Assembly: GCF_006345805.1 (NCBI RefSeq)
Contig: NC_043016.1
Location: forward strand, 2,542,001-2,606,000
DNA: 64,000 nt
Direction: 5' to 3'
Source: Octopus sinensis
Taxonomy: Eukaryota
The position numbers and the translations under genes were made by a program. Positions 17,651 through 64,000 of the stretch are shown here, one piece after another (position 1 is the first letter of the stretch; each line of letters starts with the position of its first letter). The notes under the pieces are model-generated. The model ran no database searches. It saw only the letters and a program-made list of their open reading frames with translations, and was not told the origin of the DNA.

Positions 17651-18452
17651 TGTTAATTTCGAATTCTCATTTCATTAAATATTGGTATAAGTTAAGATGA
17701 AAGAAAATAACCCCAAGAAAACGATATGTTTTGGAAACACTACCATAGAACAAGTTGATAGGCAAATGAAGCATGAAATATGAATTTTTACACTCGCAAC
17801 TTATCGACAGATGCATTCAGTCCATAACATTTCAATAACGACTCGGAAAATTGCAATCCTGCATTCCAAACACTATTTTAACATGGAAATGAATAACAGG
17901 ATGGATTTTTTTTTAGTTATCATTATCATCGGGATTATTATTTTTGTTGTTGTTATTATCGTTAATTTTATTTATTTATTGTTATTATTAATACTATTTG
18001 TAATTATTGAATGAGGGTTAATGTGCAGACGGTGGATCTGCTTTCGAGGATAATTTGGATAAAGATGGGTGAGAACTGCAAGATTAGCCTTCAGGTGACA
18101 GATAAGCCTCCGCGTAATTTCAGCCTCTTGTTCGGAAAACAACACTATGTATGAGCACTCACAGTGGTCTTAGATTTGTAAGTCCCACTGAAATTTCACT
18201 TCTCAATCACCACCATTATCATTATCATCAGCATACTTTTTTTTTTTTTGTCTTTAGGGCATTGGATCTGCAAAATATGTTTCGCAATATTATTCCCACT
18301 CTTTGCTTACATTATTAGTGTAAGTACCGAACGGTAAGTCAACTTTATTTTAACATGTCTTCGAGGCCATGATGGTATTAACTTATGCTCTTCTATCCAA
18401 ACTGCTCCTTGGGCTCCTATCAGAAATTATTTATTATTATTATATTATTATG

Positions 18453-18505
<53 letters not shown>

Positions 18506-18684
18506 CATCTCATCATTATTATTATTATTATTATTATATTATTAGTATATTATTATTATTATTATTATTATTATCTGTTGTTGTGTTGTTGTTGTTGGTG
18601 TTATTATTATTATGTTATTATTAATATATTATTATTATCATCATCATCATCATTATTATTGTTATTATTATTATTATTATTATT

Positions 18685-22650: not shown

Positions 22651-22742
22651 TAATATTATATTATTATTATTATTATTATTATATTATTATTATTTATTAT
22701 TATTATTATTATAATTATTATTATTATTATTATTATTATTAA

Positions 22743-22773
<31 letters not shown>

Positions 22774-22804
22774 GTTATTATTAGTATATATAATAATAAT
22801 AATA

Positions 22805-22845
<41 letters not shown>

Positions 22846-22957
22846 GTTACTATTATTATTATTATAATTATTATTTTATTATTATAATTATTATTATTAT
22901 TATTATTAATATTATTATTATTATATTATTATTATTATTATTTTATTATTATTATTA

Positions 22958-24721: not shown

Positions 24722-24821
24722 NNNNNNNNNNNNNNNNNNNNNNNNNNNNNNNNNNNNNNNNNNNNNNNNNNNNNNNNNNNNNNNNNNNNNNNNNNNNNNN
24801 NNNNNNNNNNNNNNNNNNNNN
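24722..24821. other. Scaffold gap (100 N)
   Basis: Exactly 100 N, typical of a placeholder of unknown size; distances across it are unreliable. Confidence 0.99.
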
Positions 24822-27594: not shown

Positions 27595-28663
27595 GTCTGC
27601 TGATACAAAATAGCGGCAAAACACGAGCAAAGCAAAAAACTGTTCTCAGTATTTAAGGAAGCTGACAAATACAACAAGAAATCATACCACCTAATATATG
27701 AAGAAGAAGTAAGAAGAAGAAAGAAAAGAAGAAGAAGAAGAAGAAGAAGAAGAATACGAAGAAGAAGCAGAAGAAGAAGAAGAAGAAGAAGAAGAAGAAG
27801 AAGAAGAAGAAGCAACACAAGCTATAAAACAAATGAAATTCAAACTAAAAATAGAACAGCAACGAACAATGATAAAACAAGGCAAGAAAAGCCCCTTCAT
27901 GGTAAATACTGGACTAAACTAAACGCAAAAGAAATAGACAAAGAAAAAATCCCAGCAATGGTTGAGAAGCTCAGGACTCAAAGCAGAGACAGAGGGATTT
28001 TTAATTGCAGCACAAGATCAAAGCCTCCCCACCAAAATTACAAAAAACATGTAATGAAAAGAAATATTACAAGTAACTGCAGAATATGTGGAGATGGACA
28101 AGAAACAATAAATCATATTATCTCTGGCTGCCCAGTCCTGGCTAAGAAGGAATATATTCACAGACACGACAGAGTTTGGACCTACATACATTGGAAGCTA
28201 TGCCAACATTATGGAATAACAACAGAAAAAGATGGTATAGGCACACACCAGAAAAGGTCACAGAAAACGAGAAAGCAACCATACTCTGGGATATGCCGAT
28301 ACACACAGATAGAGAAATTAAGGCCAACAGACCAGATATAGTTGTCAGAGATCATGAAGAAAAAATGCTTTCTTAATTTGATGTATCAATACCGGCAGAT
28401 GTCAACGTTCTCTAAAAGAAATGGAGAAACTCTCAAAATACAAAGACCTGGAATAGAGGTAACTCGAATGTGGAATCTAAAAACAGAAACAATTCCTATC
28501 ATAGTAGGTGCATTAGGCATGATAAAAATATTCATACAAATACATAACAAAAACACGAGAACTTACAAACACATATAACATACAGAAAATTGCACTACTA
28601 GGCACTGCACACAGAGCTGCGCTCGTAGTGAAGTGAAAGCACGCTATAAAATAAAACTACTGA

Positions 28664-35400: not shown

Positions 35401-35414
35401 TTTGATGACAAAAG

Positions 35415-35485
35415 ATAGATAGTAGAGAGGCAAATAGACAGACAGGCAGATAGATTGATAGACAGATAGACATATAGATAGAAAA

Positions 35486-35554
<69 letters not shown>

Positions 35555-35564
35555 CAGATAGATG

Positions 35565-35658
<94 letters not shown>

Positions 35659-35670
35659 ATGATAGTTAGA
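35415..35670. repeat. (GATA)n tetranucleotide microsatellite
   Basis: Visible directly. Confidence 0.97.
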
Positions 35671-36462
35671 TAGACATTCATCTATTTAGAAAGCCACTGT
35701 CAAAAACCTAATTATTTCACATCACTCGAAGTCTGCAATCTTAGAACGTAAGCTTCTGTTGCTCCTTCGCCATTCTCAAAAATAGCGTTCCTAATACTTT
35801 ATCTCGTTCGGCTTAACAGCCCTTCTTTTCTTGTTATTCTCCTTGTCCTGTCTTTTACTGTTTATATTTTGTACTGTCGTTACTGTCTTGTTTTTGTTAC
35901 CATTTTTACCCCTCCGCAAAAAGATCTGAAATTTTATTTAATTTGCTTTTCGCGGGAAGGAAAGTTTCGATCGAAGATGCGTAACGACTTCTCCTTCGAA
36001 ACGCAGAGTAGATGAAACCATGGCGACTGAAGAAGGGAAATTTTCCTTGTGTTATTTGTCCTGTACTCTATTTATTCGTTGTTTAAGAAAAATGTCCAGT
36101 TCCTTAGTTTTGTGTTTATGTTTTCGTTTCTCATTGTGTTCGACGTTTTTTTGGTGTCCTGTATCCATATATGCATGTATATATACATGTAGAGGTAGGT
36201 ACATACATATATGTATGTATATATGCATATGTTTTATTTATTAAGCATAATTAAATCTCAGAATGAGATTGAAACAGTAATCGCTCGATAATGTAAAGTA
36301 TAGAAGCCATCTTATCATGGCTAACCACATTAGGGAGGGGGTGTTACTATAGCTTTATAGCCCCAAGAGATCTTCGTCTCAAGCTGGCTTTAGACACAAT
36401 ATCAGTGTCCTTGGAGTATTTGCAAAGGGAGGCCATCCCTTCCTCGCAAGCCTGAATGATAG

Positions 36463-36503
36463 GCTCGAACTAGTTTCGGGATTGTTGTCCCTCGTCAACG
36501 GGC
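36463..36503 (-). ncRNA. Type I hammerhead ribozyme, family A, minus-strand copy
   Basis: Reverse complement reads GCCCG UUGACGA GGGA CAACAA UCCC GAAA CUAG UU CGAGC. Confidence 0.75.
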
Positions 36504-36926
36504 GGTAACCACCAGGTAGCGATGAAAGTGAAGGCTTCTTTACAAATATATATAAGTTTTTCTGATGGCGTCTGCCACTGATGTCGAAAAACGAACAGTA
36601 AGCATGATTAAATCTCAGAATGAGATTGAAACAGTAATCGCTCGATAATGTAAAGTATAGAAGGACACTGATATTCTGTCTAAAGCCAGCTTGAGACGAA
36701 GATCTCTTGGGGCTATGAAGCTACAGTAACACCCCCTCCCCAATGTGGTTAGCCATGATAAGATGGCTTCTATACTTTACATTATCGAGCGATTACAGTT
36801 TCAATCTCATTCTGAGATTTAATTATGCTTACTGTTCGTTTTTCGACATCAGTGGCAGACGCCATTAGAAAAACTTATATATATTTGCAAAGAAGCCTTC
36901 ACTTTCATCGCTACCTGGTGGTTACC

Positions 36927-36967
36927 GCCCGTTGACGAGGGACAACAATCCCGAAACTAGTTCGAGC
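36927..36967 (+). ncRNA. Type I hammerhead ribozyme, family A, plus-strand copy
   Basis: Stem I GCCCG/CGAGC (4 of 5 pairs), core UUGACGA (U3.G8), stem II GGGA/UCCC, GAAA, palindromic ACUAGU stem III, GUU site after 36962; distal stem CCUGGUGGU/AUCAC(U)CAGG. Confidence 0.75.
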
Positions 36968-37197
36968 CTATCACTCAGGCTTGCGAGGAAGGGATGGCCT
37001 CCCTTTGCAAATACTCCAAGGACACTGATATTGTGTCTAAAGCCAGCTTGAGACGAAGATCTCTTGGGGCTATAAAGCTACAGTAACACCCCCTCCCCAA
37101 TGTCGCTAGCCATGATAAGATGGCTTCTATACTTTACATTTTATTTATTAATTTATTATATATATATATGTGTGTGTGTGTGTATGTATAAATATAT

Positions 37198-39076: not shown

Positions 39077-40174
39077 CATACATATATACACATATATACA
39101 CATATACACATATACCACACATACGCATACACACACATATACATATATATACACACTACACGCACATACACATGTACATGCGTACCCATACACACACACA
39201 CACACGCGCGCATCCATATATACACATAGTACAGTACACACATGCGTAAAGTATACATATATCTATGCTTACACACATCACACACACACACCGCGCCTCC
39301 TTATATTCATACTTACATGCATACTCCAAAAATAAGTAAGTAGTAAAATATATATACGCGCAGTTATTCGTACATGCATACTCAAAAAATAATAATAAAT
39401 ATTAAGTATATGTACGTGCAGTTACCTATTATATAGACGGATACATACATATAAACTTACCTTACACATATATAATATATATACATATACATACATATAT
39501 ACACATACACATACACATACATATATACATACATATATATATACACACCACACATCACATACATACATACATATATACATATATATACATACTTACACAC
39601 ATGTACATATAATACACACATAGATAACTCTACGTACCTACATATGCATAACACACCGAGCGTACGCGCATATGTACATATACACATACACATACACACG
39701 CATATATATACATACATACATACACATACACACATGTGTATACACACACACACATATATATATATATACATATATATATACATACATATACACACATATA
39801 TATATATATATACATATACATATACATATATATATACATATACACACATATACACATATATATACACACACACACATACATACACACATACATACACATA
39901 TACATACATATACACACACACATATACACATATACATATACATATACACATACACACACATATATACATGTGTGCAAACATACATACATACATACATACA
40001 TACATACATACATACATACAACATACATACATACATACATACTATATGCATACATACACACACAACACATACATATATATATATATACATACATACATAC
40101 ACATACACATACCCATACATTATATACACCATATACATATACACATGCACACACTTATATCTCTACATACTCGC

Positions 40175-40218
<44 letters not shown>

Positions 40219-40482
40219 TATTTACATATACACACACATACAATACCTATATACATGTATATATACACACACACACATATATACACATCTACAATTTGTA
40301 TCTACACTCACATACCTGCACATACACATAACTACATACCTACATATACATCGACATACTCGCGTACACTCATATATATACACATATATACATATACAAC
40401 ACACCCATACATATACATATACATATACATACATATACATAAACATACACATACATAATACACATATACACACACATACACA
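38190..40482. repeat. 2.3 kb compound (CA/TA/CATA)n microsatellite between the family C arms
   Basis: Visible directly; a short unique island lies at about 38665-38820. Confidence 0.92.
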
Positions 40483-40781
40483 TCTATTCCCCTTTTTTTT
40501 ATATATAGGTTTTTTATATATAGTTATTTTTTTTTTATTATTTTATTTTTAAAATTTTTTTTTTTTTTATTTATTCTTCTATCTAATTTAACACTGACTC
40601 CTTGACCACTCCCCCAAGTATGATATTTTGCGCTATGCCTACCCCCAAAAAGTCCCCACCAACACCCCGTTAAACCTGCCTAAATGTAATAAATGCCAAT
40701 ACAATTCTTGTTAACTAGCTTCCTGAAGATTTCTCTTGAATGAAACAGTTCTATCCCGTAGAAGCTCCTTCTATATAATAA
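40483..40781 (+). repeat. Right arm of the inverted-repeat pair (family C)
   Basis: TCTATTCCCC...CTTCTATATAATAA mirrors 37901-38189. Confidence 0.85.
40717..40766 (+). ncRNA. Candidate type I hammerhead ribozyme, family C (weak stem II)
   Basis: AGCUUC CUGAAGA U-UUC-UCUU-GAA-U GAAA CAG UUCUAUC CCG UA GAAGCU: perfect 6 bp stem I, canonical core and GUA site, but stem II has only 3 bp with a U.U at its base, and stem III has one mismatch (corrected in the left copy). Confidence 0.45.
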
Positions 40782-47449: not shown

Positions 47450-47782
47450 GTGAAGGCGCATGGCTCAGTGTTAGAGCGTCGAGCTTACGATCGTGAGGTT
47501 GTGAGCTCGAATCCCGGACCGGGCTGCGTGTTGGTTCTTGAGCAAAGCACTTTATTTCACGTTGCTCCAGTTCACTCAGCTGTAGAAATGAGTTGCGACG
47601 TCACTGGTGCCAAGCTGTTATCGACCTTGTCTTTCCCTTGGATAACACTGGTGGCGTGGAGAGGGAGGGCTGGTATGCATGGGCGACTGCTGGTCTTCCA
47701 TAAACAACCTTGCCCGGACTTGTGTCTAGGAGGGAACTTTCTAGGTGCAATCCCATGGTCATTCATGACCGAAGGGGGTCAC
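47450..47782 (+). mobile_element. S-C tRNA-derived SINE
   Basis: A box TGGCTCAGTGTT, B-box-like AGCTCGAATCCC, and body TTGAGCAAAGCACTT...TTGCTCCAGTTCACTCAGCTGTAGAAATG; flanked by (TA)n. Confidence 0.85.
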
Positions 47783-52233: not shown

Positions 52234-53919
52234 AGCATGCATACATATATGTGTATACGTATGTATATATATGTATATATTCATACATACATATCAATGT
52301 GTGTGCGTGTCATTGTGCTTTTGTTTTTATCCCTCATCACACCCACCCATCCACCGGTATTGTTTTGTTTACGACTCCATATCAACTAAAATCTTTCAAA
52401 ATAATTCACTCTAGTTACTTTGTTACTTCTCAATGCAAATTACTTCGGTTCTGTTTCAAAAAGTAGGTCACTTCAATGTACAGTAGTATCTGCCCGCTGG
52501 TCAGCTTAAATGACAACTTATATGAGCCATTTCGAATCACCCGCCCAATCCCTCAAAGCTGTCCTTTCTCATCCCTTCAGCGTGTACTAACTGTGGTTCA
52601 CTGTCACAGAAACTTGAATTACTGAAGAACATCCAGTTGAAAACGGAACACGGAAGTGATGAGTTACAATTTGGAGACGATATTATCATAATGGAATTGG
52701 AGTTGGCTGGCATCATTGAAAAGGAATGAGTGGTGGTAATAGGAGTAAATTAAAACGAATAATTCGGTAAGCTCACAGCACCACAATATGCAAGTCTATG
52801 TGGTCAACGTTGAGTGGCACAGAATAACGATTCGAAAAGTTTGCTTGGGTTATGCATTGGTCGTTAACTAAATAGCAACTGGGGTGGTGTTAAAAGGAGG
52901 ATAGTCATTCTCATGAGAACACGAAAGACATTTCAGACAAATGTGATGATGCACTCGTGCATCACTTCGGTCGTCGTGTATTTTCGCCTTAAATTCTTCC
53001 TATACTCTCGCTTTCGTCTGTGCAAATTCGATACGTTCTATCGATCACATCACTCTTCAGCCGCTAACATCATATGCAGAGAGAACTTGGTGTTTTGTAA
53101 ATGAAAATGTATTAACACATTGTAATGCTGAGCACAAGCTGTGTCGTAGAACAGTGAACTAGTCCCCTCTCTTAAGTTCATCTCTACTACGGATCTGCAG
53201 TCCCGTGTCAAACGAAGATCAAGATATAAGAAATAGTATCAGGCGCATGCACAGCTCTCAGTCAAACTTCAAGTGGAGCTACAGGGACATTCATGTTTGC
53301 TTTCAATGACCAGCCTTCGTTATCATTCAAAACAGTCGTGAAGGCAGTTTTAATTGACTGAGGTAGAGATACATGAGCATGATGAGGTCACGAATGTCGA
53401 AAAGAAAAAAAACAAACGCCGGTGAACGAGTTAATTGTTTGATTGTGAAAACAAAGGAAGATAAACACGAATTACGTTAGAAACATATTTACATAGAGAA
53501 AGAGTAGACTGGCAAATGCATTTGCTGTTTTGTTCTTGAAAAGGGAGGCCACATTTACTGAAGTCGTAACTGATCACAAACCTTTGGCATCGTGCACATA
53601 TCACCTATGAATATTACGTAAATTTGACTTCTTGAAACAGCTGGTGAGATTAGACACTATATAAGGTTTTCCATTACACATTTTTTCCTTTATTATATAA
53701 CTTTTATTTTGCGATCCACGTAAAAACATGCCTCAAGCCTAATTATTTATCCCGCTTACAACCTCCATAACAGCTCGATATTGATTGGTCTTACAACAAC
53801 CTTCTATGCCATGGGCCTTGCCCTGGATGAAGACGTTGAAATTCAAGTTCGCATTCATTTGATCATTATTCTGTGATATCTATATAGTGCTTATTTTGCT
53901 CTCATCCACTCACTCTCCA

Positions 53920-54012
<93 letters not shown>

Positions 54013-54161
54013 GTCTACCTATCTTTCTGTCTGCCTGCCTGTCTATCTGTCTATTTATCGAACTATCAATCCGTATGTTTGTCTGCCTGTTTATCTATTT
54101 GTCTCTATATTTATCTACCTAACAATCTCTCTCTCTATATTTATATATATATATATAAATT
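53920..54161. repeat. (CTAT)n/(CTGT)n/(TA)n tract abutting the tandem array
   Basis: Visible directly. Confidence 0.92.
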
Positions 54162-54392
54162 ATAGAAATATTAAAATAACTAAGTCTCTCTCTAAAAGAG
54201 AACAGCGGCAGCGTTCCCGGAAAATAATAGTTATCGCCATACTAATATGGCATTCTTATAAAAATAAGAAAAAAGCTGTCCGCTTATTAGCTCCATGAGG
54301 CCATCGCCTTAAGTTAGCTATTTGATACACAAACTGTATCCATATAACCTTCGAACAAGGGAGGTCAGTCGCTCCACACTACTTGACCGGCA

Positions 54393-54434
54393 GCTACAGA
54401 CACGTTTCGGGGTATTGCCCCTTTTCAATGCAGC
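54393..54434 (-). ncRNA. Type I hammerhead ribozyme, family B (first of 22 copies)
   Basis: GCUGCA UUGAAAA GGGG CAAUA CCCC GAAA CGUG UC UGUAGC: 6 bp stem I, U3-A8 core, 4 bp stem II, minimal stem III, GUC site between 54399 and 54398. Stem I extends via GGCUGGC/GCCGGUC and CUACU/AGUAG (54376-54453). Confidence 0.88.
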
Positions 54435-57400
54435 GTAGCCAGCCAGTAGGTGTCGCTTCCGACAATCTCTGTTCGATGGTTTTATTTTTACCTAGTTTCG
54501 GTGGAATACATCCACTTGTTTTCAATAATAGAATATTAAAATAACTAAGTCTCTCTAAAAGAGAACAGCGGCAGCGTTCCCGAAAATAATAGTTATCGCC
54601 ATACTAATATGGCATTCTTATAAAAATAGAAAAAAAGCTGTCCGCTTATTAGCTCCATGAGGCCATCGCCTTAAGTTAGCTATTTGATACACAAACTGTA
54701 TCCATATAACCTTCGAACAGGGGAGGTCAGTCGTTCCACACTACTTGACCGGCAGCTACAGACGCGTTTCGGGGTATTGCCCCTTTTCAATGCAGCGTAG
54801 CCAGCCAGTAGGTGTCGCTTCCGACAATCTCTGTTCGATGGTTTTATTTACCTAGTTTCGGTGGAATACATCCACTTGTTTTCAATAATAGAAATATTAA
54901 AATAACTAAGTCTCTCTAAAAGAGAACAGCGGCAGCGTTCCCGGAAAATAATAGTTATCGCCATACTAATATGGCATTCTTATAAAAATAAGAAAAAAGC
55001 TGTCCGCTTATTAGCTCCATGAGGCCATCGCCTTAAGTTAGCTATTTGATACACAAACTGTATCCATAAACCTTCGAACAAGGGAGGTCAGACGCTCCAC
55101 ACTACTTGACCGGCAGCTACAGACGCGTTTCGGGGTATTGCCCCTTTTCAATGCAGCGTAGCCAGCCAGTAGGTGTCGCTTCCGACAATCTCTGTTCGAT
55201 GGTTTTATTTACCTAGTTTCGGTGGAATACATCCACTTGTTTTCAATAATAGAAATATTAAAGTAACTAAGTCTCTCTAAAAGAGAACAGCGGCAGCGTT
55301 CCCGGAAAATAATAGTTATCGCCATACTAATATGGCATTCTTATAAAAATAAGAAAAAAGCTGTCCGCTTATTAGCTCTATGAGGCCATCGCCTTAAGTT
55401 AGCTATTTGATACACAAACTGTATCCATATAACCTTCGAACAAGGGAGGTCAGTCGCTCCACACTACTTGACCGGCAGATACAGACGCGTTTCGGGGTAT
55501 GGCCCCTTTTCAATGCAGCGTAGCCAGCCAGTAGGTGTCGCTTCCGACAATCTCTGTTCGATGGTTTTATTTACCTAGTTTCGGTGGAATACATCCACTT
55601 GTTTTCAATAATAGAAATATTAAAATAACTAAGTCTCTCTAAAAGAGAACAGCGGCAGCGTTCCCGGAAAATAATAGTTATCGCCATACTAATATGGCAT
55701 TCTTATAAAAATAAGAAAAAAGCTGTCCGCTTATTAGCTCTATGAGGCCATCGCCTTAAGTTAGCTATTTGATACACAAACTGTATCCATATAACCTTCG
55801 AACAAGGAGGTCAGTCGCTCCACACTACTTGACCGGCAGATACAGACGCGTTTCGGGGTATGGCCCCTTTTCAATGCAGCGTAGCCAGCCAGTAGGTGTC
55901 GCTTCCGACAATCTCTGTTCGATGGTTTTATTTACCTAGTTTCGGTGGAATACATCCACTTGTTTTCAATAATAGAAATATTAAAATAACTAAGTCTCTC
56001 TAAAAGAGAACAGCGGCAGCGTTCCCGGAAAATAATAGTTATCGCCATACTAATATGGCATTCTTATAAAAATAAGAAAAAAGCTGTCCGCTTATTAGCT
56101 CCATGAGGCCATCGCCTTAAGTTAGCTATTTGATACACAAACTGTATCCATATAACCTTCGAACAAGGGAGGTCAGACGCTCCACACTACTTGACCGGCA
56201 GCTACAGACGCGTTTCGGGGTATTGCCCCTTTTCAATGCAGCGTAGCCAGCCAGTAGGTGTCGCTTCCGACAATCTCTGATCGATGGTTTTATTTACCTA
56301 GTTTCGTGGAATACATCCACTTGTTTTCAATAATAGAAATATTAAAATAACTAAGTCTCTCTAAAAGAGAACAGCGGCAGCGTTCCCGGAATATAATAGT
56401 TATCGCCATACTAATATGGCATTCTTATAAAAATAAGAAAAAAGCTATCCGCTTATTAGCTCCATGAGGCCATCGCCTTAAGTTAGCTATTTGATACACA
56501 AACTGTATCCATATAACCTTCGAACAAGGGAGGTCAGACGCTCCACACTACTTGACCGGCAGCTACAGACGCGTTTCGGGGTATTGCCCCTTTTCAATGC
56601 AGCGTAGCCAGCCAGTAGGTGTCGCTTCCGACAATCTCTGTTCGATGGTTTTATTTACCTAGTTTCGGTGGAATACATCCACTTGTTTTCAATAATAGAA
56701 ATATTAAAATAACTAAGTCTCTCTAAAAGAGAACAGCGGCAGCGTTCTCGGAAAATAATAGTTATCGCCATACTAATATGGCATTCTTATAAAAATAAGA
56801 AAAAAGCTGTCCGCTTATTAGCTCCATGAGGCATCGCCTTAAGTTAGCTATTTGATACACAAACTGTATCCATATAACCTTCGAACAAGGGAGGTCAGTC
56901 GCTCCACACTACTTGACCGGCAGCTACAGACACGTTTCGGGGTATTGCCCCTTTTCAATGCAGCGTAGCCAGCCAGTAGGTGTCGCTTCCGACAATCTCT
57001 GTTCGATGGTTTTATTTACCTAGTTTCGGTGGAATACACCCACTTGTTTTCAATAATAGAAATATTAAAATAACTAAGTCTCTCTAAAAGAGAACAGCGG
57101 CAGCTTTCCCGGAAAATAATAGTTATCGCCATACTAATATGGCATTCTTATAAAAATAAGAAAAAAGCTGTCCGCTTATTAGCTCCATGAGGCCATCGCC
57201 TTAAGTTAGCTATTTGATACACAAACTGTATCCATATAACCTTCGAACAAGGGAGGTCAGTCGCTCCACACTACTTGACCGGCAGCTACAGACACGTTTC
57301 GGGGTATTGCCCCTTTTCAATGCAGCGTAGCCAGCCAGTAGGTGTCGCTTCCGACAATCTCTGTTCGATGGTTTTATTTACCTAGTTTCGGTGGAATACA

Positions 57401-60400
57401 CCCACTTGTTTTCAATAATAGAAATATTAAAATAACTAAGTCTCTCTAAAAGAGAACAGCGGCAGCTTTCCCGGAAAATAATAGTTATCGCCATACTAAT
57501 ATGGCATTCTTATAAAAATAAGAAAAAAGCTGTCCGCTTATTAGCTCCATGAGGCCATCGCCTTAAGTTAGCTATTTGATACACAAACTGTATCCATATA
57601 CCTTCGAACAAGGGAGGTCAGACGCTCCACACTACTTGACCGGCAGCTACAGACGCGTTTCGGGGTATTGCCCCTTTTCAATGCAGCGTAGCCAGCCAGT
57701 AGGTGTCGCTTCCGACAATCTCTGATCGATGGTTTTATTTACCTAGTTTCGGTGGAATACATCCACTTGTTTTCAATAATAGAAATATTAAAATAACTAA
57801 GTCTCTCTAAAAGAAACAGCGGCAGCTTTCCCGGAAAATAATAGTTATCGCCATACTAATATGGCATTCTTATAAAAATAAGAAAAAAGCTGTCCGCTTA
57901 TTAGCTCCATGAGGCCATCGCCTTAAGTTAGCTATTTGATACACAACTGTATCCATATAACCTTCGAACAAGGGAGGTCAGTCGCTCCACACTACTTGAC
58001 CGCAGCTACAGACACGTTCGGGTATTGCCCCTTTTCAATGCAGCGTAGCCAGCCAGTAGGTGTCGCTTCCGACAATCTCTGTTCGATGGTTTTATTTACC
58101 TAGTTTCGGTGGAATACACCCACTTGTTTTCAATAATAGAAATATTAAAATAACTAAGTCTCTCTAAAAGAGAACAGCGGCAGCTTTCCGGAAAATAATA
58201 GTTATCGCCATACTAATATGGCATTCTTATAAAAATAAGAAAAAAGCTGTCCGCTTATTAGCTCCATGAGGCCATCGCCTTAAGTTAGCTATTTGATACA
58301 CAAACTGTATCCATATAACCTTCGAACAAGGGAGGTCAGACGCTCCACACTACTTGACCGGCAGCTACAGACGCGTTTCGGGGTATTGCCCCTTTTCAAT
58401 GCAGCGTAGCAGCCAGTAGGTGTCGCTTCGACAATCTCTGATCGATGGTTTTATTTACCTAGTTTCGGTGGAATACATCCACTTGTTTTCAATAATAGAA
58501 ATATTAAAATAACTAAGTCTCTCTAAAAGAGAACAGCGGCAGCGTTCCCGGAAAATAATAGTTATCGCCATACTAATATGGCATTCTTATAAAATAAGAA
58601 AAAAGCTGTCCGCTTATTAGCTCCATGAGGCCATCGCCTTAAGTTAGCTATTTGATACACAAACTGTATCCATATAACCTTCGAACAAGGGAGGTCAGTC
58701 GCTCCACACTACTTGACCGGCAGCTACAGACGCGTTTCGGGGTATTGCCCCTTTTCAATGCAGCGTAGCCAGCCAGTAGGTGTCGCTTCCGACAATCTCT
58801 GTTCGATGGTTTTATTTACCTAGTTTCGGTGGAATACATCCACTTGTTTTCAATAATAGAAATATTAAAATAACTAAGTCTCTCTAAAAGAGAACAGCGG
58901 CAGCGTTCTCGGAAAATAATAGTTATCGCCATACTAATATGGCATTCTTATAAAAATAAGAAAAAAGCTGTCCGCTTATTAGCTCCATGAGGCCATCGCC
59001 TTAAGTTAGCTATTTGATACACAAACTGTATCCATATAACCTTCGAACAAGGGACCAGGAGGTCAGTCGCTCCACACTACTTGACCGCAGCTACAGACAC
59101 GTTTCGGGGTATTGCCCCTTTTCAATGCAGCGTAGCCAGCCAGTAGGTGTCGCTTCCGACAATCTCTGTTCGATGGTTTTATTTACCTAGTTTCGGTGGA
59201 ATACACCCACTTGTTTTCAATAATAGAAATATTAAAATAACTAAGTCTCTCTAAAAGAGAACAGCGGCAGCTTTCCCGGAAAATAATAGTTATCGCCATA
59301 CTAATATGGCATTCTTATAAAAATAAGAAAAAAGCTGTCCGCTTATTAGCTCCATGAGGCCATCGCCTTAAGTTAGCTATTTGATACACAAACTGTATCC
59401 ATATAACCTTCGAACAAGGGAGGTCAGACGCTCCACACTACTTGACCGGCAGCTACAGACGCGTTTCGGGGTATTGCCCCTTTTCAATGCAGCGTAGCCA
59501 GCCAGTAGGTGTCGCTTCCGACAATCTCTGATCGATGGTTTTATTTACCTAGTTTCGGTGGAATACATCCACTTGTTTTCAATAATAGAAATATTAAAAT
59601 AACTAAGTCTCTCTAAAAGAGAACAGCGGCAGCGTTCCCGGAATATAATAGTTATCGCCATACTAATATGGCATTCTATAAAAATAAGAAAAAAGCTGTC
59701 CGCTTATTAGCTCCATGAGGCCATCGCCTTAAGTTAGCTATTTGATACACAACTGTATCCATATAACCTTCGAACAAGGGAGGTCAGACGCTCCACACTA
59801 CTTGACCGCAGCTACAGACGCGTTTCGGGGTATAGCCCCTTTTCAATGCAGCGTAGCCAGCCAGTAGGTGTCGCTTCCGACAATCTCTGATCGATGGTTT
59901 TATTTACCTAGTTTCGGTGGAATACATCCACTTGTTTTCAATAATAGAAATATTAAAATAACTAAGTCTCTCTAAAAGAGAACAGCGGCAGCGTTCCCGG
60001 AAATTAATAGTTATCGCCATACTAATATGGCATTCTTATAAAAATAAGAAAAAAGCTGTCCGCTTATTAGCTCCATGAGGCCATCGCCTTAAGTTAGCTA
60101 TTTGATACACAAACTGTATCCATATAACCTTCGAACAAGGGAGGTCAGACGCTCCACACTACTTGACCGGCAGCTACAGACGCGTTTCGGGGTATTGCCC
60201 CTTTTCAATGCAGCGTAGCCAGCCAGTAGGTGTCGCTTCCGACAATCTCTGTTCGATGGTTTTATTTACCTAGTTTCGGTGGAATACATCCACTTGTTTT
60301 CAATAATAGAAATATTAAAATAACTAAGTCTCTCTAAAAGAGAACAGCGGCAGCGTTCTCGGAAAATAATAGTTATCGCCATACTAATATGGCATTCTTA

Positions 60401-61981
60401 TAAAAATAAGAAAAAAGCTGTCCGCTTATTAGCTCCATGAGGCCATCGCCTTAAGTTAGCTATTTGATACACAAACTGTATCCATATAACCTTCGAACAA
60501 GGGAGGTCAGTCGCTCCACACTACTTGACCGGCAGCTACAGACACGTTTCGGGGTATTGCCCCTTTTCAATGCAGCGTAGCCAGCCAGTAGGTGTCGCTT
60601 CCGACAATCTCTGTTCGATGGTTTTATTTACCTAGTTTCGGTGGAATACACCCACTTGTTTTCAATAATAGAAATATTAAAATAACTAAGTCTCTCTAAA
60701 AGAGAACAGCGGCAGCTTTCCCGGAAAATAATAGTTATCGCCATACTAATATGGCATTCTTATAAAAATAAGAAAAAAGCTGTCCGCTTATTAGCTCCAT
60801 GAGGCCATCGCCTTAAGTTAGCTATTTGATACACAAACTGTATCCATATAACCTTCGAACAAGGGAGGTCAGACGCTCCACACTACTTGACCGGCAGCTA
60901 CAGACGCGTTTCGGGGTATTGCCCCTTTTCAATGCAGCGTAGCCAGCCAGTAGGTGTCGCTTCCGACAATCTCTGATCGATGGTTTTATTTACCTAGTTT
61001 CGGTGGAATACATCCACTTGTTTTCAATAATAGAAATATTAAAATAACTAAGTCTCTCTAAAAGAGAACAGCGGCAGCGTTCCCGGAATATAATAGTTAT
61101 CGCCATACTAATATGGCATTCTTATAAAAATAAGAAAAAAGCTGTCCGCTTATTAGCTCCATGAGGCCATCGCCTTAAGTTAGCTATTTGATACACAAAC
61201 TGTATCCATATAACCTTCGAACAAGGGAGGTCAGACGCTCCACACTACTTGACCGGCAGCTACAGACGCGTTTCGGGGTATAGCCCCTTTTCAATGCAGC
61301 GTAGCCAGCCAGTAGGTGTCGCTTCCGACAATCTCTGATCGATGGTTTTATTTACCTAGTTTCGGTGGAATACATCCACTTGTTTTCAATAATAGAAATA
61401 TTAAAATAACTAAGTCTCTCTAAAAGAGAACAGCGGCAGCGTTCCCGGAAAATAATAGTTATCGCCATACTAATATGGCATTCTTATAAAAATAAGAAAA
61501 AAGCTGTCCGCTTATTAGCTCCATGAGGCCATCGCCTTAAGTTAGCTATTGATACACAAACTGTATCCATATAACCTTCGAACAAGGGAGGTCAGACGCT
61601 CCACACTACTTGACCGGCAGCTACAGACGCGTTTCGGGGTATTGCCCCTTTTCAATGCAGCGTAGCCAGCCAGTAGGTGTCGCTTCCGACAATCTCTGTT
61701 CGATGGTTTTATTTACCTAGTTTCGTGGAATACATCCACTTGTTTTCAATAATAGAAATATTAAAATAACTAAGTCTCTCTAAAAGAGAACAGCGGCAGC
61801 GTTCCGGAAAATAATAGTTATCGCCATACTAAATGGCATTCTTATAAAAAATAAGGAAAAAAAGCTGTCCGCTTATTAGCTCCATGAGGCCATCGCCTTA
61901 AGTTAGCTATTTGATACACAAACTGTATCCATATAACCTTCGAACAAGGGAGGTCAGTCGCTCCACACTACTTGACCGGCA

Positions 61982-62023
61982 GCTACAGACGCGTTTCGGG
62001 GTATTGCCCCTTTTCAATGCAGC
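61982..62023 (-). ncRNA. Type I hammerhead ribozyme, family B (last of 22 copies)
   Basis: Same motif with stem III ACGCGU. Confidence 0.88.
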
Positions 62024-62334
62024 GTAGCCAGCCAGTAGGTGTCGCTTCCGACAATCTCTGTTCCATGGTTTTACTTACCTAGTTTCGGTGGAATACATTC
62101 ACTTGTTTTCAATAATAGAGATATTAAAATAACTAAGTCTCTCTAAAAGAGAACAGCGGCAGCGTTCCCGGAAAATAATAGTTATCGCCATACTAATATG
62201 GCATTCTTATAAAAATAAGAAAAAAGCTGTCCGCTTATTAGCTCCATGAGGCCATCGCCTTAAGTTAGCTATTTGATACACAAACTGTATCCATATAATT
62301 ATATATATCCATATAATTATATATATAATTATAA

Positions 62335-62458
62335 CGAGGGGTCAGCGTTATGCTTCGCCACATACTGATTACAAATAGACGCTGTCTATTTTTTTTCGAT
62401 ACCATAAAATCTTCGAGAAATAATACACTTTTAATGTAGGCAAAAAGCTGACCCCTTG
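62335..62458. mobile_element. Possible ~125 bp MITE with mariner-like ends
   Basis: CGAGGGGTCAGC and GCTGACCCCTTG form an 11/12 inverted match; the TA target duplication is not clean. Confidence 0.35.
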
Positions 62459-62579
62459 ATATAATTATGTATATAAGTATAAAATACTTTGTAAAATTTA
62501 CGTAAAAGCTTTTTATTTCCGTACTAGCTACCTGGTAAAATTATTATTGATTATACCCTAAATTATTAATATGTATATA

Positions 62580-62850
62580 TCATCATCATCATCATCATCG
62601 TTTAACGTACGCTTCCCATGCTTGCATGGGTTGGACGGCTTGTCTGAGGATTAGTGAGCCAGAGGCTGCACTAGGCTTAATTTGATCTGGCAAAGTTTCT
62701 ACAGCTGGATGCCCTTCCTAACTCCAACCACTCCGAGAGTGTTGTGGGTGCGTTTACGTACCACCGGCACAAGGGCCAGTCAGGTGGTTCTGGCAACGAC
62801 CACGCTCCAAAGGTGTTTTTATGTGCTACCTGCATGGGATCAGCCGAAAT
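62580..62850 (-). mobile_element. RTE-type 3' end (LINE or SINE tail) with a (GAT)n tail
   Basis: (CAT)n followed by CGTTTAACGT...GGATGCCCTTCCTAACTCCAACC, a pattern I recognise from RTE 3' ends; clade not verified. Confidence 0.55.
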
Positions 62851-62980
62851 TGCGAGGATGATCCGGTTCTTGACTGAAGATTGAAGGCTTCGAATGTCCC
62901 GTCCGTGTTTTTTGTATCGTCTTCTAAATGTTTTGCGTTCTTGTCCCAGTTTGTATTTTTTTACGCATACACACACACAC

Positions 62981-63094
<114 letters not shown>

Positions 63095-63174
63095 GACTTA
63101 GATAAACTTAGATATGTTTCAACCAAAGATTGGTCGAGACCATGTCTAACTAATAGCACCACCTGATAGGATTA

Positions 63175-63620
63175 TCTAAATCCTGTTTAAGTCAAGTTTT
63201 GTTTATGGTCCATTCCAGTAGTGAGTTCTTGTTGGGTGAGTTGTATACAATTATGGGTGGCTTATCCGGTATTCCTTGAAGAAATCTATCCAGACTCTGT
63301 TTAAAGTTGATGGGATCCTTTTTCCGCTTTGATCTCTTTCGAGACAATGTTAAACAGGGCAGGCCCTATTGAGGAAAAGGCTTTAATCAAAGAACAAATT
63401 GAACGTCTCCAAGATACACATGGTTCCAGAGGATCACTACCAAAAACTATTCATAATGTTCTATGTTCACACTGCCTGTCACGCTGCAGTTAAATTTGGT
63501 AATATGTCTTAACACTGTAAGGATTTGATGCAGATGCTGCTAAAATGTAAACTACCATTTCAATGTGCTCATGGGCGCCCATCTCTGATTCCTCTGCTTA
63601 ATCTTCAATATTTTTAAAAT
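63175..63620 (-). mobile_element. Non-LTR retrotransposon ORF2 C-terminal remnant (CR1/Jockey-like, clade uncertain)
   Basis: Minus-strand frameshifted SSIGPALFNIVSKEIKAEKDPINFKQSLDRFLQGIPDKPP..NKNSLLEW*. Confidence 0.55.
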
Positions 63621-64000
63621 AGCCTTGAAAAATCGAGGTTCCGTAAAATAAACCTGCAAAAACTACGAGAATATCTTATAGAGCAACAACAAGGATTACA
63701 TCAAAAGGAGGAGAACTTGTAATATTTTCTTAAAATTAGTTTAATAACTTTTTTTCTTTCACCAAAATTTCAGATGGATTTCTTTCTTCAGGAAGCTGTT
63801 TATTTTTTTGCCATTCTAAATTTTGATGATGTCGGATATTTTGATTGTGAACAAAAGAGTGGCAGAAATGGTACTAGTAACAGACTAAATGCTTCGTGGG
63901 GTATTTTTTAATTGATTTATTTCTTTACGTTTCCTTAATGTTGTGAGTCCAAATCTTTTTGGACATTCTGAGTTCAAATACTGCCATAGCCAACTTTGCT

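What the first reader, a model, noticed from the sequence alone, without database searches (positions are those of the whole stretch)
54162..62298. 8.1 kb satellite is an array of 22 hammerhead ribozymes (retrozyme-like locus)
Seen: every full 362 bp unit carries a minus-strand type I hammerhead (GCUGCA UUGAAAA GGGG-CAAUA-CCCC GAAA CGYG UC UGUAGC). The core is intact in 21 of 22 copies; only the copy near 58003-58045 loses bases in GAAA and stem II. Established: HHR-bearing tandem repeats (newt satellite 2, Schistosoma Sm-alpha, metazoan non-LTR retrozymes) are transcribed as multimers, self-cleave to monomers and can circularise. Inference: minus-strand transcription would release ~362 nt linear and circular RNAs from a young, homogeneous, protein-free retroelement array. 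Whether this family is already described I cannot tell.
Basis: partly seen in the sequence, partly recalled or inferred. Interest (0 to 1): 0.95.

Follow-up and report, generated by a model that had tools for sequence, protein, structure and literature searches.

The report
Hammerhead-ribozyme retrozyme array, variant core
An 8.1 kb tandem repeat in an animal genome carries a self-cleaving hammerhead RNA motif in each 362 bp unit, which makes it a new member of the known "retrozyme" class of small circular-RNA retroelements, with a rare paired change in the catalytic core that hides it from standard detection.

Summary
Positions 54158-62298 hold 22.5 copies of a 362 bp unit at 97% identity. 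Each of the 22 full units has the stated minus-strand motif, and only the copy at 58005-58044 has lost core bases.

Rfam finds no hammerhead, even at E<=10, because the core reads UUGAAAA instead of CUGANGA. This is the known, active U3-A8 covariation. A covariance model built only from four published, experimentally cleaving animal retrozyme hammerheads recovers all 22 copies full-length (19 of them at about 32-33 bits, E about 3e-7 to 8e-7).

The architecture is the canonical animal type I: helix I of 6 bp, helix II of 4 bp, and helix III of one A-U pair plus a palindromic CGCG loop. It therefore probably cleaves as a dimer in multimeric transcripts.

I also found a diverged relative at 36242-37141. 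Its unit is 357 bp and 58% identical, in the same phase. It lies as two head-to-head partial tandems between perfect 13 bp target-site duplications, which is a Penelope-like insertion signature. Its hammerhead keeps the core and shows compensatory changes in the helices.

Verdict: a real new member of the animal non-LTR retrozyme / hammerhead satellite class. Expression and cleavage are untested, and the host is unidentified.

The parts
54158..62298 (-). Array A: 22.5 tandem units of 362 bp. The sense strand (the one carrying the ribozyme) is the minus strand. The sense 5' end lies at about unit position 53 (62298) and the sense 3' end at about unit position 235 (54158).
   Evidence: TRF. Monomer slicing and alignment. 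nhmmer.
54393..54434 (-). Hammerhead copy 1 (CGUG loop 3); cleavage between 54399 and 54398
   Evidence: R1 33.2 bits, E 2.7e-7
54755..54796 (-). Hammerhead copy 2
   Evidence: R1 32 bits, E 6e-7
55116..55157 (-). Hammerhead copy 3
   Evidence: R1 32 bits
55478..55519 (-). Hammerhead copy 4. The core is intact, but helix I has a C x U mismatch (UGUAUC) and loop 2 reads CCAUA.
   Evidence: R1 21.7 bits, E 6.5e-4
55839..55880 (-). Hammerhead copy 5, the same weakened variant as copy 4
   Evidence: R1 21.7 bits
56201..56242 (-). Hammerhead copy 6
   Evidence: R1 32 bits
56562..56603 (-). Hammerhead copy 7
   Evidence: R1 32 bits
56923..56964 (-). Hammerhead copy 8 (CGUG)
   Evidence: R1 33.2 bits
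57285..57326 (-). Hammerhead copy 9 (CGUG)
   Evidence: R1 33.2 bits
57646..57687 (-). Hammerhead copy 10
   Evidence: R1 32 bits
58005..58044 (-). Hammerhead copy 11, damaged: helix II 3' strand is CCC and GAAA is reduced to GAA. Predicted inactive.
   Evidence: R1 17.4 bits, E 0.012
58364..58405 (-). Hammerhead copy 12
   Evidence: R1 32 bits
58723..58764 (-). Hammerhead copy 13
   Evidence: R1 32 bits
59090..59131 (-). Hammerhead copy 14 (CGUG)
   Evidence: R1 33.2 bits
59452..59493 (-). Hammerhead copy 15
   Evidence: R1 32 bits
59811..59852 (-). Hammerhead copy 16 (loop 2 CUAUA)
   Evidence: R1 31.6 bits
60173..60214 (-). Hammerhead copy 17
   Evidence: R1 32 bits
60535..60576 (-). Hammerhead copy 18 (CGUG)
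   Evidence: R1 33.2 bits
60897..60938 (-). Hammerhead copy 19
   Evidence: R1 32 bits
61259..61300 (-). Hammerhead copy 20 (loop 2 CUAUA)
   Evidence: R1 31.6 bits
61620..61661 (-). Hammerhead copy 21
   Evidence: R1 32 bits
61982..62023 (-). Hammerhead copy 22
   Evidence: R1 32 bits
59096..61987 (.). Higher-order duplication inside array A. The four-unit block 59096-60540 is repeated as 60541-61987; units four apart differ by 0, 3, 2 and 11 positions. This marks DNA-level amplification by unequal exchange.
   Evidence: Pairwise difference matrix
62288..62326 (.). 18 bp tandem duplication (TATCCATATAATTATATA x 2.2) that straddles the right junction of array A
   Evidence: TRF; sequence
53920..54157 (.). 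Microsatellite-rich left flank of array A: (TATC)38, then a TA run up to the junction. The TA-rich similarity to the right flank is a weak candidate target-site duplication.
   Evidence: TRF; flank alignment, (score 29 against 13.9 +/- 3.0 in shuffles, but the sequence is low-complexity)
36242..37141 (.). Element B: a diverged relative of the array unit (357 bp unit, 58% identical, same phase), inserted as two head-to-head partial tandems
   Evidence: nhmmer E 1e-78 to 7e-44 with the two-sequence profile; rotation control peaks at phase 0
36242..36663 (-). Element B left arm, minus sense, unit positions 162 to 357 then 1 to 226 (1.18 units). It reads through the ribozyme cleavage junction uninterrupted.
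36661..37141 (+). Element B right arm, plus sense, unit positions 56 to 357 then 1 to 179 (1.35 units). Its 5' end meets the left arm at a 3 nt overlap (AAG).
36463..36503 (-). Element B hammerhead-like motif, left arm: CGCCCG UUGACGA GGGA CAACAA UCCC GAAA CUAG UU|CGAGCC. U17 is at 36468.
   Evidence: R1 11.1 bits
36927..36967 (+). Element B hammerhead-like motif, right arm. U17 is at 36962.
   Evidence: R1 11.1 bits
36232..36244 (+). Left target-site duplication of element B: TTTTATTTATTAA
   Evidence: only two occurrences in the window; 0.06 expected
37139..37151 (+). Right target-site duplication of element B: TTTTATTTATTAA

Best explanation
Array A is a tandem locus of an animal non-LTR retrozyme, also called a hammerhead satellite. 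Its 362 nt unit encodes a type I hammerhead ribozyme on the minus strand, with a U3-A8 covariant core.

Proposed mechanism (steps 1-5 are inferred from the published family, not shown here):
1. The minus strand is transcribed as a multimer. Pol II or read-through transcription is most likely, because the sense strand contains T6 and T5 runs that would stop Pol III.
2. Helix III of a single copy is only an A-U pair closing a CGCG tetraloop. Two ribozymes in one multimer therefore pair their palindromic ACGYGU segments into a 6 bp shared helix III (a double hammerhead) and cut after GUC.
3. [quoted passage not shown] They fold into a branched rod closed by helix I and are circularised by an RtcB-type tRNA ligase.
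4. In the circle the lone ribozyme is poorly active, so the circle is stable.
5. Circles or multimers are copied by a retroelement reverse transcriptase, most likely from a Penelope-like element, and inserted near microsatellites.

Element B in the same window looks like such an insertion. It consists of two arms, each longer than one unit, joined head-to-head and flanked by a 13 bp target-site duplication. After insertion, array A has also grown or been homogenised at the DNA level by unequal exchange.
For: What the tools show:
- 22 motifs in register with a 362 bp repeat.
- All 22 are recovered full-length by model R1, which was built only from coral, mussel and two axolotl retrozyme ribozymes with mapped cleavage sites.
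- The architecture matches those four segment by segment: helix I 6 bp, helix II 4 bp, loop 2 of 5-6 nt, GAAA, a self-complementary helix III segment, and UH.
- The 3 nt / 1 nt internal loop (UAC/U) six pairs from the core, followed by GGC/GCC, is the same layout as in the axolotl sequences.
- Two ribozyme domains cofold at -40.7 kcal/mol against 2 x -17.3, using the 6 bp ACGCGU duplex. A 2 bp helix with a 2 nt loop is sterically impossible in one copy.
- The monomer RNA folds at -127.9 kcal/mol, z = -7.1, with 64% of bases paired as a circle.
- GC is 42% and no ORF exceeds 58 aa.

Comparative evidence from element B:
- 58% identity over the whole unit, z = 8 against shuffles, and maximal only in the phase set by the two predicted cleavage sites.
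- All fixed core bases are kept.
- Compensatory changes occur in three helix I pairs, one helix II pair, the palindromic loop 3 (CGCG to CUAG) and three pairs of the helix I extension. Position 3/8 changes from U-A to U.G.
- In helix I plus its extension, 91% of cells are paired with 6 compensatory pairs, against 18-51% paired and 0-1 compensatory pairs in slid controls.

Mobility evidence:
- A perfect 13 bp duplication sits exactly at both ends of element B and nowhere else in the window.
- Both arms are longer than one unit and read through the cleavage junction.
- Their sense 3' ends point outward.
- Both elements lie next to microsatellites.

Published knowledge:
- U3-A8 occurs in nature and such cores cleave in vitro (PMC3088659; PMC4209133).
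- Short-helix-III type I ribozymes cleave poorly as monomers and well as dimers, and RtcB circularises the product (PMC7229834).
- Penelope-like elements make partial-tandem plus inverted 5'-truncated insertions with a microsatellite bias (PMC8557442).
- Animal retrozymes have been proposed to be non-autonomous derivatives of Penelope-like elements.
Against: - No RNA data of any kind are available. Transcription, cleavage and circles are all inferred.
- No Rfam hammerhead model matches, even at E<=10.
- The U3-A8 core and the minimal helix III could mean low activity.
- Within the array the ribozyme is no less variable than the rest of the unit: 3 of 42 variable columns against 33 of 320, p = 0.78.
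- The four-unit duplication shows that DNA-level amplification contributed to the array.
- Array A itself has only a low-complexity, doubtful target-site duplication.
- Element B's own ribozyme has two broken helix I pairs and a U.G at 3/8, and scores only 11.1 bits. It may be dead.
- No reverse transcriptase or GIY-YIG gene of a Penelope-like element was seen in the window, only LINE-type fragments.
- No relatives were found outside the window, so the comparative evidence rests on two lineages.
Confidence: 0.78

Rival explanations
1. Relic satellite. The repeat descends from a ribozyme-bearing retroelement but is now ordinary satellite DNA, amplified and homogenised by unequal crossing-over. 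It is silent or transcribed only incidentally, and the hammerhead persists because the array is young, not because it works.
For: - A four-unit block is duplicated inside the array and the edge units are the most divergent, as is typical of satellite dynamics.
- The ribozyme is no less variable than the rest of the unit within the array.
- One copy is dead and two are weakened.
- Array A has no clean target-site duplication.
Against: - Between the two diverged lineages the core is kept and the helices change by compensation, which implies selection on the fold at family level.
- 19 of 22 copies are fully intact.
- All published arrays of this kind that were tested are heavily transcribed (PMC7229834).
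Confidence: 0.15
2. Part of an autonomous Penelope-like element. The repeats are pseudo-LTR tandems of a coding element rather than a separate non-autonomous family.
For: Penelope-like pseudo-LTRs carry hammerheads, form tandem and inverted structures, and prefer microsatellites. U3-A8 cores were first seen in Penelope-like elements of Schistosoma.
Against: - 22.5 uniform units with no ORF above 58 aa.
- nhmmer finds no other homologous sequence in the window.
- No reverse transcriptase or GIY-YIG domain lies next to either element.
- The ribozyme has the canonical architecture (helix I 6 bp, helix II 4 bp, loop 1 and loop 2), not the minimal Penelope-type one.
Confidence: 0.05
3. Chance resemblance. 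A GC-rich hairpin next to GAAA in a repeat happens to look like a hammerhead.
For: No Rfam hit, and the core differs from CUGANGA at two positions.
Against: - E about 3e-7 to 8e-7 per copy with an independent model over 128 kb of searched sequence.
- The two core differences are the one known compensating pair.
- The layout is identical to validated ribozymes.
- The motif is conserved with covariation in a 58%-identical relative.
Confidence: 0.01

Closest known systems
Animal non-LTR retrozymes (Acropora, Mytilus, Ambystoma; Cervera & de la Pena 2020, PMC7229834)
   Same: - Tandem units of 150-450 bp, each with one type I hammerhead.
- GC below 50%, with no ORF, LTR, primer-binding site or polypurine tract.
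- Highly self-paired monomer RNA closed by helix I.
- Ribozyme layout identical segment by segment.
   Different: - The core is UUGAAAA (U3-A8) instead of CUGANGA.
- The unit sequence is unrelated to the published ones.
- Rfam, and descriptors that require CUGANGA, do not detect it.
- Expression is not shown here.
Newt satellite 2 / axolotl HHR_Amex1 (Rtz_331)
   Same: - Helix III is reduced to one A-U pair closing a palindromic tetraloop (CAUG there, CGYG here).
- The same 3 nt / 1 nt internal loop sits in helix I.
- Unit size is similar (330 vs 362 bp).
- The published ribozyme cleaves about 6% as a monomer and efficiently as a dimer, so the same behaviour is predicted here.
   Different: The host is unidentified; its microsatellite-rich sequence made me suspect a decapod crustacean, but that is only a guess. 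The 3/8 core pair differs, and loop 2 is CAAUA rather than CAAAAA.
U3-A8 hammerheads (Perreault et al. 2011, PMC3088659; Cercyon Penelope-like elements of Schistosoma, PMC4209133)
   Same: The same covariation of the C3-G8 core pair to U3-A8. It is reported as natural, and such cores cleave in vitro.
   Different: The Schistosoma cases are minimal, mostly single, heterogeneous motifs in pseudo-LTRs. Here the variant sits in a canonical full-architecture type I ribozyme fixed across a 22-unit array, with a relative carrying U3.G8.
Penelope-like elements (pseudo-LTR hammerheads and insertion architecture; PMC8557442, PMC4209133)
   Same: Element B shows a partial tandem plus an adjacent inverted 5'-truncated copy. 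Both elements sit next to microsatellites. Both carry type I hammerheads with a small palindromic helix III.
   Different: There is no reverse transcriptase / GIY-YIG ORF here, the units are only about 360 bp, and no 30-40 bp tail was recognised.
Dolichopoda cave-cricket pDo500 satellite and Schistosoma Sm-alpha
   Same: Arthropod and flatworm repetitive DNAs whose transcripts carry a hammerhead.
   Different: The unit sequences are unrelated. Sm-alpha is a SINE-like element; no tRNA-like gene was detected in this window.
Plant LTR retrozymes
   Same: Non-autonomous retroelements propagated through ribozyme-processed circular RNA.
   Different: They have type III hammerheads within LTRs, a primer-binding site and polypurine tract, 4 bp target-site duplications, 600-1000 nt circles, and Gypsy-mediated mobilisation.

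Membership tests
Hammerhead ribozyme, type I | Conserved catalytic core: C3 U4 G5 A6 N7 G8 A9 / G12 A13 A14 / A15.1-U16.1, H17 | tested here: met
   U4, G5, A6, A9, G12, A13, A14, A15.1, U16.1 and C17 are all present in 21 of 22 copies. Positions 3 and 8 are U and A, the documented Watson-Crick covariation of the C3-G8 pair. The feature is met only if that covariation is accepted.
Hammerhead ribozyme, type I | Three helices around the core, with helix I open and helices II and III closed by loops | tested here: met
   Helix I is 6 bp and opens onto the rest of the unit. Helix II is GGGG/CCCC with a 5 nt loop. Helix III is an A-U pair plus a CGYG loop.
Hammerhead ribozyme, type I | Match to the curated Rfam hammerhead covariance models | tested here: not met
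   No match at gathering score over the whole window and none at E<=10 in 53500-64000. The likely cause is the two core substitutions together with the near-absent helix III.
Hammerhead ribozyme, type I | Match to a model of experimentally validated animal type I ribozymes | tested here: met
   R1 was built from four published cleaving ribozymes. All 22 copies match over positions 1-44 of 44 at 17.4-33.2 bits. The best unrelated hit in the window scores 18.2 bits.
Hammerhead ribozyme, type I | Helices supported by covariation | tested here: met
   Array A against element B shows compensatory changes in 3 helix I pairs, 1 helix II pair, the loop 3 palindrome and 3 extension pairs. Slid controls give 0-1. 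Only two lineages are available.
Hammerhead ribozyme, type I | Site-specific self-cleavage giving 2',3'-cyclic phosphate and 5'-OH ends | not testable with these tools
   This needs in vitro transcription of monomer and dimer constructs.
Animal non-LTR retrozyme | Tandem repeat of 150-450 bp with at least two consecutive units carrying a complete type I hammerhead | tested here: met
   362 bp x 22.5 with 22 motifs. This meets the operational criterion of Li et al. 2026. The ribozyme domain folds at -17.3 kcal/mol, below their -5 threshold. Their CUGANGA-type descriptors would probably miss it.
Animal non-LTR retrozyme | Non-coding, no LTR / primer-binding site / polypurine tract, GC below 50% | tested here: met
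   The longest ORF is 58 aa, GC is 41.7%, and the unit has no internal long repeats.
Animal non-LTR retrozyme | Monomer RNA predicted to be highly self-paired, with the ribozyme free to fold | tested here: met
   MFE is -127.9 kcal/mol with z = -7.1. The circular fold is -122.9 kcal/mol with 64% of bases paired, and helices I and II of the ribozyme are present in the MFE structure.
Animal non-LTR retrozyme | Signs of retrotransposition: target-site duplications longer than 4 bp and dispersed copies | tested here: met
   Element B has a perfect 13 bp duplication at both ends and arms longer than one unit. For array A itself the flank similarity is low-complexity and inconclusive.
Animal non-LTR retrozyme | Expressed as linear and circular monomer RNAs | not testable with these tools
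   No transcript data could be reached. Exact-protein and six-frame look-ups in public assemblies found nothing.
Animal non-LTR retrozyme | Co-existence with autonomous Penelope-like elements in the genome | tested here: inconclusive
   Only LINE-type reverse-transcriptase fragments were seen in this 64 kb window. The window was not searched exhaustively, and the rest of the genome is not available.
Penelope-like element (autonomous) | ORF with a telomerase-like reverse transcriptase and a GIY-YIG endonuclease between pseudo-LTRs | tested here: not met
   There is no ORF above 58 aa in array A and none in or beside element B.
Sm-alpha-like SINE | tRNA-derived 5' region with a Pol III internal promoter | tested here: not met
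   ARAGORN finds no tRNA-like gene in the window. T6 and T5 runs in the sense strand would terminate Pol III inside each unit. Promoter boxes were not modelled formally.

The most novel reading that the evidence does not exclude
This is a previously unrecognised retrozyme lineage whose hammerhead core has moved along the classic covariation path, from C3-G8 through U3.G8 (element B) to U3-A8 (array A), while keeping full type I architecture. Such lineages would be invisible to Rfam and to CUGANGA-based descriptors, so retrozyme content in microsatellite-rich invertebrate genomes would be underestimated. Element B, with two arms each longer than one unit joined head-to-head inside one 13 bp target-site duplication, would be a direct genomic footprint of reverse transcription of a circular or multimeric ribozyme RNA primed from both ends of a staggered break, in the manner of a Penelope-like element.
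Probability: 0.3. Interest if true: 0.65.

Novelty: new member of a known kind. Interest (0 to 1): 0.5.

Why it matters
- It adds a well-defined hammerhead retrozyme family with a naturally fixed U3-A8 core in 21 intact copies, and a U3.G8 relative. This gives a natural series for testing how much the 3/8 pair matters in a full-length, tertiary-stabilised ribozyme that works as a dimer.
- It shows concretely that curated covariance models and consensus descriptors miss real members of this class.
- The second element offers sequence-level support for two proposals: that these RNAs are copied as circles or multimers, and that they are inserted with the tandem/inverted, microsatellite-biased signature of Penelope-like elements. 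Both have been argued so far mostly from co-occurrence and pseudo-LTR similarity.
- It does not reveal a new kind of system.

Tried and rejected
- **Rfam.** The gathering scan of the whole window and the E<=10 scan of 53.5-64 kb gave no hammerhead or other ribozyme on either strand. I read this as a sensitivity failure, not as evidence against the motif, because a model built from validated ribozymes finds all copies.
- **Relatives elsewhere.** Nothing was found by any route, so all comparative evidence is internal to the window:
  - exact-protein look-ups for an array ORF and for the LINE fragment;
  - two degenerate ribozyme patterns scanned against metagenome, viral and prokaryotic genome collections;
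  - a six-frame pseudo-protein of the unit trimer searched against 5.8 billion proteins.
- **Host identification.** The LINE reverse-transcriptase fragment has hits of only about 60% identity, from fish to sea anemone. The MLH3-like peptide shares no words with the database. Literature searches for a hammerhead or retrozyme in decapods were uninformative. The very high microsatellite content made me suspect a decapod crustacean, but this is a guess.
- **Continuation of the array.** I suspected that the array continued past 62298 as a decayed unit. The alignment score equals that of shuffles and genomic controls, so I rejected this.
- **Target-site duplication of array A.** The TA-rich similarity is low-complexity and not convincing.
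- **Selection within the array.** The ribozyme is not significantly less variable than the rest of the unit.
- **MAFFT alignment of short ribozyme domains.** It misaligned the 3' ends, so I replaced it with an explicit segment parse.
- **Other R1 hits.** The hit at 47598-47657 lacks the core and was dismissed. The hit at 40717-40766 is kept only as a passing note.
- **tRNA-like or SINE origin.** ARAGORN finds nothing.
- **Pfam scan of ten window ORFs.** Only a weak zf-RVT match was found, and no Penelope-like domains.

Full report
**1.

Tandem Repeats Finder reports one array at 54158-62298 with period 362, 22.5 copies, 97% matches and score 15570. There are none on the plus strand or elsewhere in the window.

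- Seventeen copies read GCUGCA UUGAAAA GGGG CAAUA CCCC GAAA CG(C/U)G UC UGUAGC exactly.
- Two copies (59811, 61259) have loop 2 CUAUA.
- Two copies (55478, 55839) have loop 2 CCAUA and also a G-to-U change that breaks one pair of helix I.
- One copy (58005-58044) has lost a C of helix II and an A of GAAA.

The predicted scissile bond lies between plus-strand 54399 and 54398, and at the equivalent site in each unit. The array has no ORF longer than 58 aa. The consensus unit is 41.7% GC. No further copy of the unit lies outside the array by blastn.

**2. Is it really a hammerhead?**

Rfam says no. There is no family at gathering score in the window and no hammerhead even at E<=10 in 53500-64000.

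The reason is visible in the sequence. The core strand is UUGAAAA rather than CUGANGA, so position 3 is U and position 8 is A. Only four bases (CGYG) lie between GAAA and UC.

Both features are documented in the literature.
[quoted passage not shown] - The same variant occurs about 1,300 times in the genome of Schistosoma mansoni, where it was first noticed in Cercyon, a Penelope-like element (PMC4209133).
- That paper also defines the canonical animal type I ribozyme: helix I of 6 bp, helix II of 4 bp, and helix III of 1-2 bp capped by a 2-4 nt palindromic loop, working as a dimer. This is exactly what is seen here.

For an independent test I took the four retrozyme constructs with marked cleavage sites from the supplement of PMC7229834 (coral Amil224, mussel Mg353, axolotl Ax353 and Ax330). 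I aligned their ribozymes (A1) and built covariance model R1 with helices I, II and III only, leaving out the 3/8 pair. I then scanned the whole window with filters off.

- All 22 copies are recovered on the minus strand over model positions 1-44 of 44.
- Nineteen score 31.6-33.2 bits (E 2.7e-7 to 7.9e-7).
- The two helix I variants score 21.7 bits and the damaged copy 17.4 bits.
- The best unrelated hit in 128 kb of searched sequence scores 18.2 bits.

A segment-by-segment parse shows the same layout in the four validated ribozymes and in this one, including a self-complementary helix III segment of 6-10 nt. Helix I is followed by a 3 nt / 1 nt internal loop (UAC/U) and then GGC/GCC. This is the same arrangement as UGC/U and UUC/U in the two axolotl sequences.

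**3. Predicted mode of action**

A 2 bp helix III with a 2 nt loop cannot form in a single copy. In effect there is one A-U pair closing a CGCG tetraloop, as in axolotl HHR_Amex1. That ribozyme cleaves 6% in an hour as a monomer and efficiently as a dimer (PMC7229834).

ACGCGU is a palindrome, and the ACGUGU variant still self-pairs through G.U. Two ribozyme domains cofold at -40.7 kcal/mol against 2 x -17.3, using the 6 bp shared helix.

The 362 nt minus-strand RNA folds into a branched rod closed by helix I. Its MFE is -127.9 kcal/mol with z = -7.1. As a circle it folds at -122.9 kcal/mol with 64% of bases paired, and helices I and II of the ribozyme are present in the MFE structure. The plus strand is also structured (z = -6.2) but carries no ribozyme.

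The sense strand contains T6 and T5 runs. Multimeric Pol III transcripts are therefore unlikely. That conclusion is my inference.

**4. A relative in the same window**

Two equal, weak R1 hits on opposite strands (36463-36503 minus and 36927-36967 plus, 11.1 bits each) led to an 899 bp element at 36242-37141.

- It is built from a 357 bp unit. Direct repeats are spaced 357 bp apart, and the inverted arms of 374 nt are 98% complementary.
- The left arm is minus sense and covers unit positions 162-357 then 1-226 (1.18 units).
- The right arm is plus sense and covers 56-357 then 1-179 (1.35 units).
- The sense 5' ends meet in the middle with a 3 nt overlap, and the 3' ends face outward.
- The element is bounded by a perfect 13 bp direct repeat, TTTTATTTATTAA, at 36232-36244 and 37139-37151. 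These are the only two occurrences in the window, where 0.06 are expected.

I started both units at their predicted cleavage sites and aligned the 357 nt unit to the array consensus. There are 220 identities over 382 columns (58%), z = 8 against shuffles. A rotation control peaks at phase 0, scoring 218 against 90-204 at other phases and 145 at best for the reverse complement. A two-sequence nhmmer profile finds only these two elements in the window.

The two elements are therefore diverged members of one family with the ribozyme at the homologous position. Element B's motif reads CGCCCG UUGACGA GGGA CAACAA UCCC GAAA CUAG UU|CGAGCC. Compared with array A:

- All fixed core bases are kept.
- Position 3/8 is U.G instead of U-A.
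- Three helix I pairs change on both sides and stay paired. Two are broken.
- The fourth helix II pair changes from G-C to A-U.
- The loop 3 palindrome changes from CGCG to CUAG, which is a G-C to U-A exchange in the dimer helix.
- The UAC/U internal loop is kept.
- The extension of helix I shows three further compensatory pairs.

In helix I plus its extension, 91% of cells are paired with 6 compensatory pairs, against 18-51% paired and 0-1 compensatory pairs in slid controls. The interior of the rod is only modestly conserved: 62 of 108 array-MFE pairs are kept in element B, against 37-47 in slid controls.

Variable stems with compensation around an invariant core are the expected signature of a selected ribozyme fold. 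The evidence rests on only two lineages.

**5. What the insertions say about mechanism**

Both arms of element B read straight through the cleavage junction and exceed one unit. The template was therefore an uncleaved multimer or a religated circle.

A partial tandem with an adjacent inverted 5'-truncated copy, and a preference for microsatellites, are described as hallmarks of insertion by Penelope-like elements. They distinguish such insertions from LINE target-primed reverse transcription (PMC8557442). Both elements here abut microsatellites.

This fits two published proposals: that animal retrozymes are mobilised by Penelope-like elements (PMC7229834) and that they derive from them (2026 preprint).

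Array A itself gives weaker evidence of retrotransposition.
- Its flanks share only TA-rich similarity.
- An 18 bp duplication straddles the right junction.
- The array does not continue as a decayed unit beyond 62298.
- The four-unit block 59096-60540 is repeated at 60541-61987, with 0, 3 and 2 differences between the first three matching units. Edge units are the most divergent. Unequal exchange has therefore shaped the array.
- Within the array the ribozyme is not less variable than the rest of the unit (3 of 42 against 33 of 320 variable columns, p = 0.78). This is uninformative at 97% identity.

**6. Comparison, limits and verdict**

The locus meets the structural definition of an animal non-LTR retrozyme, historically called a hammerhead satellite, as in newt satellite 2. 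It also meets the operational criterion of Li et al. 2026: a TRF array with at least two consecutive complete hammerheads and a ribozyme MFE below -5 kcal/mol.

It differs in its U3-A8 core and in escaping Rfam. It would probably also escape descriptors that require CUGANGA.

Limits:
- I could not identify the host.
- I found no relative outside the window.
- I had no access to RNA data.
- No ORF of a Penelope-like element was seen in the window.

I classify the locus as a new member of a known kind. The hammerhead-retrozyme identity is well supported. Activity as a dimer, circular-RNA formation and mobilisation by a Penelope-like element are inferred from the family and from element B. Interest is moderate. 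The finding is real and tidy, with a useful natural core variant and an informative second insertion, but it is not a new kind of system.

Noticed in passing
window 36242-37141 (target-site duplications at 36232-36244 and 37139-37151): A second, diverged member of the same ribozyme-bearing repeat family: 357 bp unit, 58% identical. It is inserted as two head-to-head partial tandems (1.18 and 1.35 units) between perfect 13 bp target-site duplications. Its hammerhead-like motif has U3.G8 and two broken helix I pairs.
   Followed up: yes
window 40717-40766 (+): A single hammerhead-like motif with a canonical core: AGCUUC CUGAAGA UUUC-UCUU-GAAU GAAA C...G UA|GAAGCU. Helix I is a perfect 6 bp, helix II is weak, and helix III is a long unpaired segment. 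R1 scores it 18.2 bits, E 0.007 (rough). It is not in a tandem repeat and is not related to the array unit. It could be a chance match or a decayed solitary ribozyme.
   Followed up: partly
window 63423-63617 (+); in-frame TAA at 63510-63512: A fragment encoding the C-terminal endonuclease motif region of an MLH3-like MutL homologue (ACHAAVKFG...FQCAHGRPSLIPL). It matches yeast MLH3 structures at E 2.5e-8. It is interrupted by an in-frame stop, and a frame change appears to lie upstream, so it is probably a pseudogene or an assembly error. It lies about 1.1 kb from the array on the strand opposite to the ribozyme.
   Followed up: partly
window 19751-20332 (-) and 27958-28341 (+): Decayed LINE-type retrotransposon fragments. 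One is a reverse-transcriptase C-terminal region whose best database relatives are only about 60% identical and range from fish to sea anemone. The other has a weak zf-RVT zinc-binding motif. No Penelope-like domains were seen.
   Followed up: partly
whole window, e.g. 1-1045 (CCA)n, 18426-18684 and 22654-22957 (ATT)n, 35413-35674 (AGAT)n, 39441-40483 (ATAC)n: Microsatellite density is extremely high: 161 TRF rows, and about 10% of bases lie in perfect repeats of 12 bp or more. This is a eukaryotic genome, and I suspected a decapod crustacean, but that is a guess and the host was not identified.
   Followed up: no
window 24722-24821: A run of 100 N, which is an assembly gap.
   Followed up: no
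window 62288-62326: An 18 bp tandem duplication (TATCCATATAATTATATA x 2.2) made of the last 11 bases of the array plus 7 flank bases. It could be a junction repair scar or a tail-like extension; it is unexplained.
   Followed up: partly
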